The position numbers and the translations under genes are program-made. This document shows, piece after piece, positions 41,601 through 62,383 of a stretch of 64,000 nt of DNA. Each line of letters starts with the position of its first letter. Position 1 is the stretch's first letter. Under the pieces are notes generated by a model that ran no database searches, had not been told where the DNA came from, and saw only the letters and a program-made list of their open reading frames with translations. The stretch is from sequence record NC_023568.1; one strand, written 5' to 3'.

Positions 41601-42125
41601 CTATTTGCGCCCTTTTGTTTTTTGTTTCTTTGCTTTTCGTTTAGCCCGTCTAAGTTCTTTTCGTTTAGCGATTTTATCTGCTCTTCGAACTGCGTCATAA
41701 TCAGCAGCACAAGACGCAGCAAACGCATCAGGTTTGAACACGGGCTCTTGACCAACATATCCCATGATCGTGCCTTTAGCTTCGTTATAGGCAACGTGAG
41801 ATTTGTGTGTAGGGTCAGGGTTGATGTCAACGTGAACTTCAAAGCCTCTAGTACCGCACATTGGCTTAACCATTAGTGCAGTTTCACCCGCTTTGTATAC
41901 TTCATTCATCAATCGACTTCTGATACCATCTTTACATGATAAGTATGCAGGTTCAGTCTCAACTGCTTTAAACACTTGAGCACCTTTACTACCTTCAAGA
42001 TGAATTATGATCACAGTCGCGTAACTAATCATGTCACTTTTACGCTTACTATCACACCCAACGTATATTGTGCTATTTGGATGACTGTTATTGATAGCTG
42101 TTTCTATCGCTTCCCAATCGAACAT
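41601..42125 (-). CDS. RNase H-like YkuK-family protein
   Basis: IYVGCDS, RLMNEV, EVHVDIN, ASCAAD motifs. Confidence 0.75.
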   Translation of the reverse strand: MFDWEAIETAINNSHPNSTIYVGCDSKRKSDMISYATVIIIHLEGSKGAQVFKAVETEPAYLSCKDGIRSRLMNEVYKAGETALMVKPMCGTRGFEVHVDINPDPTHKSHVAYNEAKGTIMGYVGQEPVFKPDAFAASCAADYDAVRRADKIAKRKELRRAKRKAKKQKTKGRK

Positions 42126-42138
42126 TTTCACCTCTTAC

Positions 42139-42174: not shown

Positions 42175-43611
42175 TTAAAAGCTGTAGCGTTCGACGCCTA
42201 CAGTTTTCATCATGATCTTGATTGGCTCAAGCTCACCACCCAACAGTGAAGTCAAGATAGATGGGCTACAACCAGATACCAGTGCAGTACCCGCTTCACC
42301 AGCTTTAACCGGAACGTTGCCAAGACGACCACGAATGTTCCAGAAGACCAGTTGTGGCATTTCATAACCAGCACGTGCGTACATGGCTTTGATTGCATCG
42401 AAGTTCGCAGGTTCACCGCGACCGTACCAGCCACCGCCAGTGTTTGCTTGATCGAATTCCATGTCACTCATGATAAGCAACTTGGTTGGCATATCTTCTT
42501 GTGAAAGATTTGCACGCTTCGCACGCTCTAGCAGAACATCAAAGCACTTACCGATGTTCGTACTCATGTCTTCGCCTGAACGATTCATGTTATCAAGACG
42601 CTCTTTCAATGAGCTACCGCGCAACTGGTGGAAGTGCGGGTCGCTTGAGAACGAAATGAATTGATCTTTGAAGATGCCTTCATTGCGTTCAGCAACATAA
42701 ATCCCAAGAGACATTGCAACTTGCTTACAAGTCACACCTGAATGGTCTGTACCTGCGTTGATTGGCGTGCTCATAGAGCCAGACACGTCAACAACAGGGA
42801 TGATGCGCTCATCAGAACCTTCCATGTAGTTTGGCAGAGCTTTCCATTGCTCGTTCGCTACAGACGCATTACCGTGACTAACGCTCTTAACGACATCGTA
42901 TGGGAACAATGCGCCAGCGTTGATCTTCGCTTCACCTTTTTGAAGTGACTCGATGTAGCTTGTGTAACGAGCTGAAGCGTTACGACCGAATGCTTGTTGA
43001 TAACGAGCAGACGCTACAGAAGGCAATTTACCGAAGTCGATTGCATCCCATTCCTGAGCACACATTTTCTGTTCAACAGTGTCAGACAGAAGAGAAAGAA
43101 TCTTACGCCACTGCTTCGCAGTTACACCAAGAGACTTGATTGTGCGCTTGAATACGTGACCGTTTTTGCTGTTCTCGCGTGGGAACCACTTCGCAGCAAG
43201 ACCGTTCTTGTCGTTTACAATCGCGTTTGACCACATAGTGATCGCGTCTTTTTCTAGACTTGTGCCGAAAGCAGAAATCAAGTCATCGAAACGACCTAGT
43301 TCTGGAATTTTCGACATTACAGCACGAGCTACGTCAGGCTGCTCATTACAAAGTTTAGCGAAAATAGTACGGAAAGTACCACGTTCACCCGCACCACCGC
43401 GAACGTCACGAGACCATAGCAAGATGCGTGTCGCAAGTTCTGGGTTTTCTGCAAACGCACGACCGAACAGTGTTTTAGACTGATCGTTGCCACGCATAGC
43501 AGCAATACCGAAGAACAAGTTTAGACACTCGTTACCTGAAGTGCTGTGAGTAACTGCACCGTTTACTGTGCGTGAATCGTTTGTTTGCATTGCGTTCATA
43601 AATACTGACAT
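42175..43611 (-). CDS. Ro60-like TROVE/vWA protein (DUF2828 type)
   Basis: RDVRGGAGER, AAKWFPRE helical region; MIDAS VVDVSGSM, MSDMEFD, LVFWN. Confidence 0.8.
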   Translation of the reverse strand: MSVFMNAMQTNDSRTVNGAVTHSTSGNECLNLFFGIAAMRGNDQSKTLFGRAFAENPELATRILLWSRDVRGGAGERGTFRTIFAKLCNEQPDVARAVMSKIPELGRFDDLISAFGTSLEKDAITMWSNAIVNDKNGLAAKWFPRENSKNGHVFKRTIKSLGVTAKQWRKILSLLSDTVEQKMCAQEWDAIDFGKLPSVASARYQQAFGRNASARYTSYIESLQKGEAKINAGALFPYDVVKSVSHGNASVANEQWKALPNYMEGSDERIIPVVDVSGSMSTPINAGTDHSGVTCKQVAMSLGIYVAERNEGIFKDQFISFSSDPHFHQLRGSSLKERLDNMNRSGEDMSTNIGKCFDVLLERAKRANLSQEDMPTKLLIMSDMEFDQANTGGGWYGRGEPANFDAIKAMYARAGYEMPQLVFWNIRGRLGNVPVKAGEAGTALVSGCSPSILTSLLGGELEPIKIMMKTVGVERYSF

Positions 43612-43690
43612 TGTTCATTTCCTCATAATTAATTGCTGTAAAATGTCTTTGATGAAGTGATTATACGCGAATTTTAATGCGTGTAAACAC
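43607..43690 (-). promoter_or_regulatory. early promoter plus leader carrying the AG-N8-CAGCA module that pairs with the start codon
   Basis: GTTTAC-17-TATAAT; GACATT (43642-43647) complementary to AATGTC (43607-43612). Confidence 0.75.
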
Positions 43691-48488: not shown

Positions 48489-48503
48489 AGATGTGCAATA
48501 CAC

Positions 48504-48748
48504 AGACATTCGAGAAGTGTTTTATCGTCTTTCCTTAAATCTCATTTGACTATAACGATGTTTCTCATCGGAAAAATACTCATGATTCGGCATGAGTCCT
48601 ATTTCGTTTGACAGTACGAACACCGTCTTAATGGTCATTTCCTACCACGAGAATGCGACAGGCTCACGTCATCACTGAGAAAGCAGCTAGTGCGCCTCAT
48701 TACTATTAAAGTTTGCTTTGATTTTGTAATGATTGCTGTACAATGTCT
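48504..48748 (-). ncRNA. 245-nt structured RNA closed by the AG-N8-CAGCA module (Y-RNA-like, long type)
   Basis: AGACATT/AATGTCT terminal helix, about six internal hairpins, 3' motif shared with 50505-50733. Confidence 0.75.
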
Positions 48749-48759
48749 TATTGCGAATT

Positions 48760-50500: not shown

Positions 50501-50504
50501 GTAC

Positions 50505-50733
50505 AGACAATACCGAAGTGTTTTTTTCGTCTTTTGCATAAATCGGAGTTGACTAGCTTATTGATTCTCAACAAGCAAATATCGTCTGTTTCAGCGACGC
50601 GCCTATCTGACTATTTCTAGACAGAGAGAATCTTTCCTTTCAAGCTGCGCCTAAGCAAGCTCAGGTTAAAATCAGCCCAGGTTAAGATCATCACTTCTTT
50701 TAAGTAATTTCAATTGTTTGCTGTATATTGTCT
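50505..50733 (-). ncRNA. 229-nt structured RNA closed by the AG-N8-CAGCA module (Y-RNA-like, long type)
   Basis: AGACAATA/TATTGTCT terminal helix; AAAGACGA...AAAACACTTC 3' motif. Confidence 0.75.
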
Positions 50734-50796
50734 CTCTCACCATGCTCGTGATATGCCGAAGCAAAGTATCATTCGTCGCATGATAAGAGCTTAATA

Positions 50797-51338: not shown

Positions 51339-51344
51339 GTTACT

Positions 51345-51457
51345 GAGTGTTATTACTAGCGTCGTCCAGACCAGTGATACCAACACTGAAAGGGAATCGA
51401 ACCCTAAACATTTCTTTCCGATAAGAATATTAGTAAATTGTTTGCTGAAAACACTCT
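51345..51457 (-). ncRNA. YrlA-like circularly permuted tRNA mimic with the module
   Basis: GAGTGTT/AACACTC end helix; order T arm (TTCGATT), capped acceptor-like stem, GG-containing D-like loop. Confidence 0.75.
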
Positions 51458-51465
51458 TCGGTATT

Positions 51466-51780: not shown

Positions 51781-51792
51781 TAAAATTTAAAC

Positions 51793-51850
51793 AGTAATCC
51801 TTTTTGCTTTTTCCAAATAAAAGTTTTGTATTGTTTGCTGTAAGATTACT
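51793..51850 (-). ncRNA. 58-nt end-closed RNA with the module
   Basis: AGTAATC/GATTACT helix then TTA-CAGCAAA. Confidence 0.7.
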
Positions 51851-51855
51851 TAAAC

Positions 51856-55893: not shown

Positions 55894-56017
55894 TGGTGGA
55901 GAGTACGGGATTTGAACCACGTGACAAAAAGATTTACCTAGTTATTAAGGTTGCAGCATGAATGCTTGTCAGTATTCTTTAACATTCTTTTGCTCTACCA
56001 GACTGAGCTAACTCTCC
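55894..56017 (-). ncRNA. tRNA body with the module replacing the anticodon loop
   Basis: GGAGAGT/ACTCTCC, ACCA; GAATACT-GACA-AGCATTC-ATG-CTGCAA. Confidence 0.8.
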
Positions 56018-56024
56018 AGAATTT

Positions 56025-56140
56025 GAAGGTGAAGTGCAGGACTCGAACCTGCGACCTCCGGCGTGCATGTGAATGCAGAATGAAATCTTATCAGACTTCG
56101 TTTTTTGGCCGGCGTTCTAACCTACTGAACTAACTTCACC
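56025..56140 (-). ncRNA. Asp-like tRNA body with the module replacing the anticodon loop
   Basis: GGTGAAGT/ACTTCACC, CCGGC/GCCGG stem; GAAGTCT-GATA-AGATTTC-ATT-CTGCA; no CCA. Confidence 0.78.
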
Positions 56141-61535: not shown

Positions 61536-62383
61536 TATACGAAAAAATCTTCGATGCCTCGTAGAGTTACTTTCTCTGCGTTACCACACTTAGGACATTT
61601 AACGTCAACATAAGTGGTGATTCGCGGCACTGCATCGACGAAAGTTTGAACTTTCTTGAATGCAGCAGTGTCTAGTTCACCCATGATATTGATCAACTGA
61701 CCTTGTGCGGCAAGCTCTTCTTTGCTGTACACAGTATCACCAACGTGAACTTCTTTGATCGATTCAACAGCAATATTGAACAGACCTTCAGGAGTGTTAG
61801 GGTCGTTGTTCTCATACACGCGAATATTCGGGTGTTGGAGTTTGATTAATACTTGTTTGTTAACACGAACTGTATCTTCACCAGTGAATGCAGGCACAAA
61901 CGCAGCGTTTAGGTCTATATTTGCCGTGATTCGTTCACCGCATAGACGCTTGTCAGGTGCGAATACTGCTTCGATTGCCTCTTCGTTTGATTGATTAACA
62001 ATCTCTGCGAACAAGTCATCGGCAGATTTCTCAAGTTCAGCTTCTTCTTGTGCGTCTAGCTGCTTGAGTTCTTCTTCTGGCTTATCTGCACAGCAGTTGT
62101 ATTCCGCTTGAATTTCAGTTACGCCATTGCTGTTCATATACATGTGCATGAACAAGTATTCAGCATCACCAACCGTTAGGTCTTCCATCTTGATGTCTGA
62201 AACAATACAGTTTTCAAGACATTGCTCGATTGCATCAACCTTTTCATCTGATTCGTTAGCGATCAACAGTGTTTTATGCTCTTTTGCAAGCATGGCACGT
62301 AACTTGATCTCTTCGCCAGTAGATGGTAGTTTTACAGTATATTGAGGCGCAGCAAGTACGCTCAAATCAAATGGTTTTGTCAT
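61535..62383 (-). CDS. gp26: baseplate hub subunit
   Basis: P.Y.VKLPS.G..I..R....KE.K.LL, CPKCG. Confidence 0.85.
   Translation of the reverse strand: MTKPFDLSVLAAPQYTVKLPSTGEEIKLRAMLAKEHKTLLIANESDEKVDAIEQCLENCIVSDIKMEDLTVGDAEYLFMHMYMNSNGVTEIQAEYNCCADKPEEELKQLDAQEEAELEKSADDLFAEIVNQSNEEAIEAVFAPDKRLCGERITANIDLNAAFVPAFTGEDTVRVNKQVLIKLQHPNIRVYENNDPNTPEGLFNIAVESIKEVHVGDTVYSKEELAAQGQLINIMGELDTAAFKKVQTFVDAVPRITTYVDVKCPKCGNAEKVTLRGIEDFFV

What the first reader, a model, noticed from the sequence alone, without database searches (positions are those of the whole stretch)
43607..43690. The module in the Ro-like gene's own leader pairs with its start codon: predicted autoregulatory operator
Seen: just after a GTTTAC-17-TATAAT promoter the transcript reads AAAGACATT-TTA-CAGCAATTAATTATGAGGAAATGAACAATGTCA. 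GACATT pairs with AATGTC, which contains the AUG, and the loop holds the GAGG RBS. The 5' strand matches that of the 245-nt RNA. This is the strongest sequence-level link between protein and RNA motif. Inference: free protein represses its own translation and is titrated by the RNA panel.
Basis: partly seen in the sequence, partly recalled or inferred. Interest (0 to 1): 0.85.

Follow-up and report, generated by a model that had tools for sequence, protein, structure and literature searches.

The report
RNA-mimic operator in Ro-like gene leader
The 5' leader of a phage gene for a Ro-like RNA-binding protein carries a copy of the hairpin-plus-UACAGCAA module found in a widespread family of phage small RNAs encoded next to such genes; because the copy pairs with the gene's own start codon, it is a credible but untested self-regulation switch.

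Summary
The window is Vibrio phage VH7D (KVP40-like). GTTTAC-17-TATAAT is followed by GACAUU-U-UACAGCAA, a loop holding GAGG, then AAUGUC containing the AUG of a 478-aa DUF2828/DUF7788 protein. That protein's predicted fold matches Ro60 best.

The match is not chance. A covariance model built from nine small RNAs of three phage groups, without the leader, ranks the leader second in the 64-kb window (28.9 bits, E about 2e-4). The module is kept in all ten homing-endonuclease-free relatives.

The module defines an apparently undescribed RNA family:
- a covarying closing helix with an invariant G-C pair;
- the core U(A/U)C(A/U)GCAA;
- a 3' (C)UGU tail.

In 78 environmental phage loci, 44 of 52 model hits lie on the gene strand within 500 nt of the DUF2828 gene. 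Minimal or full modules also abut the ribosome-binding site in four further lineages. The architecture resembles Dictyostelium Class I RNAs, below Rfam's threshold.

Autogenous translational repression is the best explanation but is untested (about 0.45). Three relatives with a homing endonuclease inserted lack the helix, and most distant relatives have no leader module.

The parts
43683..43688 (-). -35 hexamer GTTTAC of the early-type promoter
   Evidence: Sequence. The promoter scan scores it 11 of 12 with the -10. GTTTAC or GTTTAT is conserved in the HEG-free relatives.
43660..43665 (-). -10 hexamer TATAAT. The expected transcript start is about 43653.
   Evidence: The start site is inferred from spacing and was not mapped.
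43642..43648 (-). 5' strand of the module helix, (A)GACAUU, followed by the spacer U at 43641
   Evidence: Identical to the 5' strand of RNA-A. Aligned as helix by model R1. Invariant in 11 leaders.
43633..43640 (-). Core motif UACAGCAA, unpaired, next to the 5' strand
   Evidence: Family-wide core U(A/U)C(A/U)GCAA. Conserved in the leaders while the flanks vary. Also kept in the three HEG-bearing leaders.
43621..43624 (-). Shine-Dalgarno GAGG in the loop, 9 nt before the AUG
43607..43612 (-). 3' strand of the helix, AAUGUC, containing the start codon AUG (43611-43609)
42175..43611 (-). Gene for the 478-aa Ro-like protein (DUF2828 + DUF7788, a helical-repeat ring plus vWA with a DxSxS MIDAS motif)
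   Evidence: Pfam and PHROG matches. AF2 model with pLDDT 76. Foldseek top hits are Ro60 of phage phiLo and Xenopus Ro. D275, S277 and S279 are invariant.
51789..51852 (-). Free-standing mini RNA (about 58 nt) with the same module: AGUAAUC-U-UACAGCAA...GAUUACU-GUUU
   Evidence: RF01414, 31.8 bits; 80.4 bits; it is a training member
48502..48750 (-). Its closing helix is AGACAUU/AAUGUCU, with UACAGCAA and a 3' GU tail.
50503..50735 (-). RNA-B, a paralogue of RNA-A. Its helix AGACAAU/AUUGUCU is compensatory relative to RNA-A.
51342..51459 (-). RNA-C: module GAGUGU-U-UUCAGCAA...ACACUC-AGU enclosing a tRNA-like T-arm (GGGUUCGAUUCCC)
   Evidence: 21.7 bits
52262..52354 (-). Candidate RNA-D: UAGCUUGC-A-UACUGCAA...GCAAGCUG-UU
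   Evidence: 17.6 bits, weak

Best explanation
The leader of the Ro-like (DUF2828) gene carries a cis copy of the closing-helix-plus-UACAGCAA module. That module defines a family of phage small RNAs which are most likely the protein's own RNA partners, comparable to Y RNAs. In the leader the module's 3' strand is the start codon region.

Proposed mechanism: the bare helix is marginal, so translation proceeds. When the protein exceeds its free RNA ligands, it binds the leader copy, stabilises the helix over the AUG and blocks initiation. The abundant small RNAs from the tRNA cluster compete for the protein and relieve repression.

Shown here: the module is present, statistically significant and conserved; the RNA family has a covarying helix; the family is genomically linked to DUF2828 genes; and the module is repeatedly placed against the ribosome-binding site.

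Inferred: that the protein binds the module, and the direction of the effect.
For: 1. Model R1, trained without the leader, scores it 28.9 bits (E = 1.7e-4). This is the second-best hit in the window, with the helix aligned onto the AUG. Orthologous leaders score 17.8-26.4 bits.
2. GACAUU-N-UACAGCA and AAUGUC are invariant in 11 leaders, while the sequence before, between and after them varies. The helix dominates the predicted ensemble in eight of them.
3. The family helix is real: 96.8% of cells are paired, 6 of 7 pairs show double-sided changes, and the covariation score is 0.943 against 0.176 in shuffles. One G-C pair is invariant.
4. Linkage to the protein: 50 of 52 hits in 78 IMG/VR loci are on the gene strand, and by my count 44 lie within 500 nt of the gene. 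Three tandem modules sit directly upstream of the gene in Listeria phage LP-125, and three RNAs sit directly downstream in mycobacteriophage Whirlwind. T4, which lacks the gene, has no hit in its tRNA region.
5. Independent recurrence at the ribosome-binding site: minimal 38-41-nt modules end 0-1 nt before the Shine-Dalgarno in L093, L100 and L081, and a YrlA-like member ends 6 nt before it in L090 and L091.
6. The protein has a Ro60-like fold. Ro60 proteins, including a phage one, bind stem-plus-motif RNAs encoded beside their genes (PMC4201824, PMC12135203).
Against: - There is no binding or expression data.
- The leader helix never varies, so it provides no covariation. Five of its six 3' nucleotides are fixed by the Met-Ser coding sequence.
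- The helix is only 6 bp, and the leader folds no better than shuffles.
- The first family pair (A-U) is A-A in the leader, and the tail is AGU rather than UGU.
- Three HEG-bearing relatives lack both strands, so the helix is dispensable.
- Aeh1, the Felix O1-like phage and about 70 of 76 environmental relatives have no leader module.
- The module lacks the canonical Ro-binding CGAA motif.
- Adjacency of the RNAs to the gene could alone create leader-like remnants without regulation.
- R1 E-values are rough because calibration was shortened.
Confidence: 0.45

Rival explanations
1. The leader module is the remnant of a small-RNA gene that once stood just upstream of the Ro-like gene, as it still does in Listeria phage LP-125 and in L090/L091. 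It is kept only because it supplies the promoter, the 5' UTR and perhaps a protective 5' stem. It plays no part in feedback.
For: RNAs of the family lie directly upstream of the gene in other lineages. The leader copy is truncated, spanning 40 nt against 55-65 nt for free mini RNAs, with a mismatched first pair. HEG-bearing phages do without the helix.
Against: The core and 5' strand are invariant across lineages whose neighbouring leader bases diverge. A neutral remnant should decay. Minimal modules sit against the Shine-Dalgarno in several independent lineages. The core is retained even in the HEG-bearing leaders.
Confidence: 0.25
2. The module is recognised by a different factor. Candidates are a processing or decay nuclease (host RNase E, III or P, PNPase, or the RNase H-like DUF458 protein encoded just downstream) or an RNA chaperone. 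On this view the leader copy controls mRNA processing or stability rather than Ro-like feedback.
For: The free RNAs are embedded in a tRNA cluster and must be cut out of precursors. A DUF458 RNase H-like gene follows the Ro-like gene at 41601-42131. A phage Ro60-Y RNA complex engages host PNPase (PMC12135203).
Against: The tight linkage is to the DUF2828 gene itself, across phages that lack the DUF458 neighbour. T4, with a processed tRNA cluster but no DUF2828 gene, lacks the module.
Confidence: 0.15
3. Regulation acts in trans by base pairing. The 5' strand of RNA-A (GACAUUGU) is complementary to ACAAUGUC at the start codon, so RNA-A could act as an antisense repressor. The resemblance of the leader's own 5' strand would then be secondary.
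For: The 8-nt complementarity is present in VH7D and in all HEG-free relatives (sequences).
Against: That strand of RNA-A is sequestered in its own closing helix. Eight base pairs is short. Both partners are invariant, so there is no covariation. This does not explain the UACAGCAA core in the leader or the Shine-Dalgarno-abutting modules elsewhere.
Confidence: 0.05
4. The similarity and the 6-bp complement are chance in AT-rich sequence.
For: Short inverted repeats are common. The leader is no more stable than shuffles.
Against: The exact 15-mer pattern occurs only at the leader and the two RNAs. The R1 score is far above background. The module is conserved in 11 leaders.
Confidence: 0.03

Closest known systems
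Ro60-Y RNA ribonucleoproteins, including bacterial Rsr-YrlA and Thermus phage phiLo phiRo60-Yrl1/2 (PMC4201824, PMC12135203)
   Same: A ring-plus-vWA protein of Ro60 fold. Small RNAs whose 5' and 3' ends form a stem with a conserved motif beside the 5' strand. RNA genes lie next to the protein gene. Some partner RNAs carry tRNA-like T and D arms.
   Different: The protein matches DUF2828/DUF7788, not Pfam TROVE, and has no sequence-level match to solved Ro60 structures. The conserved RNA motif is U(A/U)C(A/U)GCAA, not GNCGAA. My literature searches found no leader copy or autoregulation reported for Ro60.
Dictyostelium Class I RNAs (Rfam RF01414; PMC7919456)
   Same: About 60 nt, with a short stem joining the ends. 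An invariant 5' G pairs with the C of a 3' CUGU. The motif (CC)UUACAGCAA lies next to the 5' stem strand, and the remainder is variable and A/U-rich. RF01414 is the best Rfam match outside the tRNA-related models for mini RNAs of three phage groups: 31.8, 24.0, and 23.1 and 19.1 bits.
   Different: All scores are below the gathering score of 41.5. Class I RNAs are reported as unique to Dictyostelia and are Pol III genes with a DUSE promoter. Their known direct binder is the RRM protein Rnp1A/CIBP. Common descent versus convergence is unresolved, and I could not test whether dictyostelids have a DUF2828 protein.
Autogenous translational operators that mimic the protein's main RNA ligand or enclose the start codon (E. 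coli ThrRS leader, ribosomal-protein operators, MS2/R17 coat protein-replicase hairpin, T4 RegA and gp32). This comparison rests on established knowledge and was not searched here.
   Same: A weak hairpin encloses the initiation codon or abuts the Shine-Dalgarno. The operator copies the sequence and structure of the protein's presumed primary RNA target. Competition between free ligand and mRNA sets the expression level.
   Different: Binding and repression are not demonstrated here. The regulator would be a Ro-like ring protein, for which no such loop is known.

Membership tests
Phage module RNA family defined here (model R1) | Closing helix of about 7 bp joining the two ends, with an invariant G-C at the second pair | tested here: met
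   The leader pairs GACAUU with AAUGUC, including the G-C pair. The first pair is A-A.
Phage module RNA family defined here (model R1) | Core U(A/U)C(A/U)GCAA, 0-2 nt after the 5' strand | tested here: met
   UACAGCAA lies one nucleotide after GACAUU.
Phage module RNA family defined here (model R1) | 3' tail (C)UGU after the 3' strand | tested here: inconclusive
   The leader has C-AGU (VH7D) or C-AGC (others), whereas most family members have C-UGU.
Phage module RNA family defined here (model R1) | Significant score with a model that excludes the candidate | tested here: met
   28.9 bits, E = 1.7e-4, with filters off over 64 kb. Orthologous leaders score 17.8-26.4 bits.
Dictyostelium Class I RNA (RF01414) | Score at or above Rfam's gathering threshold of 41.5 bits | tested here: not met
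   The mini RNA scores 31.8 bits. Other phage mini RNAs score 19-24 bits. The leader is not reported at E <= 1.
Dictyostelium Class I RNA (RF01414) | Stem joining the ends, a 5' G paired with the C of a 3' CUGU, and the UUACAGCAA motif beside the 5' strand | tested here: met
   Met for the free phage RNAs, compared against the features listed in PMC7919456. The leader lacks the UGU tail.
Dictyostelium Class I RNA (RF01414) | DUSE promoter and Pol III terminator | tested here: not met
   The phage copies follow sigma-70-type GTTTAC-N17-TAnAnT promoters or lie within tRNA precursors.
Ro60/TROVE protein family | Pfam TROVE domain by sequence | tested here: not met
   Only DUF2828 and DUF7788 match. 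No Ro60 appears in a sequence search of the PDB.
Ro60/TROVE protein family | Helical-repeat ring plus a C-terminal vWA domain with a MIDAS motif | tested here: met
   Foldseek top hits are 9l5y (E = 1.7e-7) and 1yvr (E = 9.7e-7), TM about 0.5, on a model with pLDDT 76. DVSGS is invariant.
Ro60/TROVE protein family | Partner RNA genes encoded beside the protein gene | tested here: met
   In VH7D itself the RNAs lie 5-9 kb away, in the tRNA cluster.
Ro60/TROVE protein family | Partner RNA carries the GNCGAA(N)G Ro-binding motif | tested here: not met
   The module core is UACAGCAA. CGAAG occurs only in some larger associated RNAs.
Autogenous translational operator | Operator overlaps the Shine-Dalgarno or start codon of the regulator's own mRNA | tested here: met
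   The AUG lies in the 3' strand. In L093, L100 and L081 the Shine-Dalgarno abuts the 3' strand.
Autogenous translational operator | The regulator binds the operator and lowers its own translation | not testable with these tools
   This needs binding assays, reporter fusions and toeprinting.

The most novel reading that the evidence does not exclude
DUF2828 proteins are a second, Ro-like branch of ring RNA-binding proteins. Their dedicated partners are a Class I-type RNA family: a closing helix with an invariant G-C pair, UUACAGCAA, and a CUGU tail. The family spans phages of Proteobacteria, Firmicutes and Actinobacteria and is related to the Class I RNAs of dictyostelid amoebae. In several phage lineages a minimal copy of the RNA in the protein's own leader closes an autoregulatory loop. 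If so, the uncharacterised protein DDB_G0281243, pulled down with Class I RNA DdR-21, would be a candidate eukaryotic counterpart. That last point is entirely untested.
Probability: 0.3. Interest if true: 0.92.

Novelty: new variant of a known kind. Interest (0 to 1): 0.8.

Why it matters
- **A testable RNA ligand for DUF2828.** DUF2828 proteins are found in hundreds of phages (711 phage records) and thousands of metagenomic sequences, with no known RNA partner. This result gives a concrete candidate ligand and a defined binding-site hypothesis.
- **First feedback loop for a Ro-like protein.** An operator that copies the ligand would be, as far as my searches show, the first such loop described for a Ro-like protein.
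- **Meaning for phage tRNA clusters.** It would show that tRNA clusters in large phages also encode a conserved class of regulatory or quality-control RNAs.
- **The Dictyostelium connection.** Class I RNAs are held to be unique to social amoebae and their function is unknown. The resemblance makes that question approachable from a simple phage system.

Tried and rejected
- **Rfam.** At gathering thresholds it finds only tRNAs in the window. At E <= 1 nothing covers the leader, RNA-A or RNA-B.
- **Thermodynamics.** Taken alone it does not support the hairpin: z = +1.08. I rejected it as the criterion because protein-dependent operators are typically weak.
- **PDB sequence search.** The hits were only designed repeat proteins. 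The Ro60 link needed a structure prediction.
- **CACTTC upstream of the leader module.** It resembles the 3' side of RNA-A and RNA-B, but it is not conserved in relatives (CATCAC there) and I dismissed it.
- **TACAGCAA elsewhere in the window.** The copies at 61722, 63034 and 63215 lie inside structural genes and are chance.
- **Alternative partner in the coding region.** AGUGUCU near 43522 can pair with AGACAUU. It is conserved but coding-constrained and farther away, so I did not prefer it.
- **Covariation in the leader helix.** There is none to count, because all pairs are invariant.
- **Literature.** I found nothing on DUF2828 RNA partners, on the motif in phages, or on Ro60 autoregulation.
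- **Dictyostelium follow-up.** Avesson 2011 is not held. The Dictyostelium proteome in the supplement is truncated, so I could not check DDB_G0281243 or a dictyostelid DUF2828 protein.
Full report
**Source and gene**

The window matches Vibrio phage VH7D at 100% identity. VH7D is a KVP40-like member of Schizotequatrovirus. The finding lies on the minus strand, upstream of ORF 42175-43611, which encodes 478 aa. The protein matches Pfam DUF7788 (E = 6.7e-46), Pfam DUF2828 (E = 1.5e-28) and PHROG 850, labelled 'RNA-binding protein'. It has no TROVE match and no sequence-level hit to a solved Ro60.

An AlphaFold model built from 33 homologues has pLDDT 76 and pTM 0.72. Its two best PDB matches are Ro60 of Thermus phage phiLo (9l5y, E = 1.7e-7) and Xenopus Ro (1yvr, E = 9.7e-7), and after those only vWA domains. 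The DVSGS MIDAS residues are invariant. 'Ro-like' is therefore justified by fold, not by family membership.

**The observation**

- Promoter: GTTTAC (43688-43683), 17 nt, TATAAT (43665-43660).
- 5' strand: GACATT (43647-43642), then T.
- Core: TACAGCAA (43640-43633).
- Ribosome-binding site: GAGG (43624-43621).
- 3' strand: AATGTC (43612-43607), with the ATG at 43611.

The 18-mer around the 5' strand matches the start of the 245-nt RNA at 48750-48733 in 16 of 18 positions. The pattern GACANTNTACAGCAA occurs exactly three times in 64 kb: the leader and the 5' ends of two paralogous RNAs.

The hairpin is weak on its own. The leader folds no better than shuffles (z = +1.08), although the centroid structure contains the helix. 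On the predicted transcript, the pair probability of the helix is 0.9-0.98 in eight related phages and about 0.5 in VH7D and its two closest relatives, XZ1 and PVA23. A perfect complement appears by chance in 1.6% of shuffles of the downstream 50 nt.

**What the module is**

The tRNA cluster of the window holds at least four RNAs built the same way. Their two ends form a helix. The 5' strand is followed after 0-2 nt by U(A/U)C(A/U)GCAA, and the 3' strand is followed by (C)UGU.
- RNA-A, about 245 nt.
- RNA-B, about 229 nt. Its helix AGACAAU/AUUGUCU is compensatory to RNA-A's AGACAUU/AAUGUCU.
- RNA-C, about 115 nt, which encloses a tRNA-like T-arm.
- A 58-nt mini RNA.

Orthologues in related phages add further compensatory changes. 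Examples are GGCAAU/AUUGCC in F86 and AGCAAUC/GAUUGCU in KVP40.

The same mini RNA, including loop sequence, occurs in phages that share little beyond the DUF2828 gene:
- Aeromonas phage Aeh1;
- a Felix O1-like Salmonella phage;
- Listeria phage LP-125;
- mycobacteriophage Whirlwind.

**Formal test of the leader**

I built covariance model R1 from nine mini RNAs of the KVP40-like, Aeh1 and Felix O1-like phages. The leader, RNA-A, RNA-B and RNA-C were left out. Scanned without filters over both strands of the window, the model returns its training member first (80.4 bits). The leader comes second: 43650-43602, 28.9 bits, E = 1.7e-4, with AGACAUU aligned against AAUGUC(A).

Below the leader come RNA-C (21.7 bits) and a tRNA-like RNA at 56232-56176 (18.7 bits). 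Then come RNA-D (17.6 bits), RNA-A (16.7 bits) and RNA-B (12 bits). Unrelated hits score 14 bits or less. Orthologous leaders score 26.4 (K575), 22.2 (F86), 19.1 (nt-1), 18.7 (VS2) and 17.8 bits (KVP40). In a 50-kb T4 segment that includes its tRNA cluster and lacks a DUF2828 gene, the best hit is 16.8 bits, inside a coding region. These E-values are rough because calibration was shortened.

**Conservation of the leader**

In the ten homing-endonuclease-free relatives the promoter hexamers, GACATT-N-TACAGCA, GAGG and AATGTC are all kept. The 8-14 nt before the module and the roughly 10 nt after the core differ between lineages. Because both strands are invariant there is no covariation, and most of the 3' strand is fixed by the Met-Ser codons.

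Three phages (VH1_2019, CZ01, D480) carry a GIY-YIG homing endonuclease gene inserted divergently 33 nt from the start codon. Their leader reads GGAGCUUACAGCAAUGACUAGU. Both helix strands are gone and the first codons differ, yet UACAGCAA survives between the Shine-Dalgarno and the AUG. The helix is therefore dispensable, although the core may not be.

**Link between the RNA family and the protein**

In LP-125, three tandem modules fill the gap directly upstream of the DUF2828 gene (35.5, 30.7 and 16.4 bits). In Whirlwind, three RNAs fill the gap directly downstream, and the middle one has the tRNA-like core of YrlA (Rfam, 38 bits).

In 78 IMG/VR loci encoding 48-55% identical proteins (892 kb searched), 52 hits reach E <= 1. 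Fifty are on the gene's strand. By my count lie within 500 nt downstream of the stop codon and 5 within 300 nt upstream of the start. Those zones make up about 3.5% of the search space.

An alignment of 27 hits gives 96.8% paired cells and 6 of 7 pairs with double-sided changes. The covariation score is 0.943, against 0.176 in shuffles and 0.2 or less in slid controls. One G-C pair is invariant. That alignment was fitted to the model, which favours the structure, but the slid controls share the same bias.

**Recurrence at the ribosome-binding site**

Most environmental relatives have their own promoter and no leader module. Four further lineages do place a module against the ribosome-binding site.
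- L093: AGAAUUA-A-UACAGCAA-ACUUUUUAA-UAAUUCU directly before GGAGG (24.8 bits).
- L100: AGAAUUU-U-AACAGCAA-ACUUAAAAU-AAAUUCU before GAAGGAG (17.2 bits).
- L081: a weaker version (11.4 bits).
- L090 and L091: a YrlA-like member ends 6 nt before the Shine-Dalgarno.

These 38-41-nt hairpins are shorter than any free-standing member. That fits operators better than RNA genes.

**Mechanism**

The best-supported reading is an autogenous translational operator that copies the protein's RNA ligand. The bare helix is marginal. Bound protein would hold it closed over the AUG or cover the Shine-Dalgarno, and free small RNAs would compete for the protein. Ro60 contacts mainly the 5' strand and adjacent motif of Y RNAs (PMC4201824), and a phage Ro60 binds RNAs encoded beside its gene (PMC12135203). 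By analogy the module is a plausible binding site.

Binding, direction of the effect and the transcript start are all inferred. I put this explanation at about 0.45. The rivals are:
- a retained remnant of an upstream RNA gene (0.25);
- recognition by a nuclease or another factor (0.15);
- antisense action of RNA-A on ACAAUGUC (0.05);
- chance (0.03).

**Comparison with known systems**

The system works like Ro60-Y RNA. It fails two membership features: the TROVE domain by sequence and the CGAA motif. The RNA architecture is that of Dictyostelium Class I RNAs. Those are about 60 nt, with a stem joining the ends, an invariant 5' G paired with the C of a 3' CUGU, and UUACAGCAA beside the 5' strand (PMC7919456).

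RF01414 is the best Rfam match outside the tRNA-related models for mini RNAs of three phage groups, at 31.8, 24.0, and 23.1 and 19.1 bits. All are below the gathering score of 41.5. Class I RNAs are reported as unique to Dictyostelia. One of four proteins pulled down with a Class I RNA, DDB_G0281243, has no known function, and I could not check whether it is a DUF2828 protein. Homology versus convergence is open.

**Verdict**

- The surrounding RNA family and its linkage to DUF2828 appear undescribed in the literature I could search.

Noticed in passing
window 56275-56155, 56139-56028, 56017-55897, 54337-54225 (minus strand): Four tRNA-like RNAs of 112-121 nt have normal acceptor, D and T arms but a long insertion in place of the anticodon arm. 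Rfam calls three of them tRNA with insertions, while ARAGORN skips them. A sub-threshold YrlA hit spans 55992-56056. Two carry CGAAG, and one carries a UUCUGCAA core (R1, 18.7 bits). They look like further Y-RNA-like partners.
   Followed up: partly
L006 10517-11153, L007 10533-11145, L011 10509-11136 (VH1_2019, CZ01, D480): A GIY-YIG homing endonuclease gene is inserted divergently just upstream of the Ro-like gene and replaces the leader and the first codons. The new N-terminus MTSLF and its DNA (ATGACTAGTCTATT) match those of the unrelated environmental locus L093. This suggests the allele was imported together with the endonuclease.
   Followed up: partly
window 43661-43686: The 17-nt promoter spacer is part of an inverted repeat that changes in a compensatory way between phages (CACGGGTT/AATCCGTG, CGCTT/AAGCG, and so on). 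Read on the plus strand it is a terminator-like hairpin followed by a T-run. It may stop antisense transcription, or it may be a DNA operator.
   Followed up: no
window 41601-42131 (minus strand): The gene directly downstream of the Ro-like gene encodes an RNase H-like DUF458/YkuK protein. The pairing is conserved in all KVP40-like relatives but not in Felix O1-like, Listeria or mycobacterial phages.
   Followed up: no
L018 22855-26567 (Listeria phage LP-125): RtcB-like ligase and RNA ligase genes lie 1.3-5 kb downstream of the DUF2828 gene and its three upstream module RNAs. This echoes the bacterial Rsr-YrlA-RtcB RNA-repair operons.
   Followed up: no
window 51830-51795; L014 9199-9232; L016 31836-31806 (minus strand); L019 21699-21729: The mini-RNA loop is conserved beyond the module (AAAACUUU...GAUGAAAUCAAA-like) between phages of Vibrio, Aeromonas, Salmonella and Mycobacterium. 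This implies a second functional site in the free RNA that the leader copy lacks.
   Followed up: no
window 43522 region (minus strand, codons 26-32): AGUGUCU in the coding region can also pair with the leader's AGACAUU (7 bp, 9 bp in K575). It is a possible alternative, longer-range helix, but the site is constrained by coding.
   Followed up: no
L101 25908-26171 (phage T4 rnaC, rnaD): T4's two stable small RNAs sit beside its tRNA cluster, in the same position as RNA-A in VH7D. They do not match the module model, though rnaC has a T-arm-like element.
   Followed up: partly
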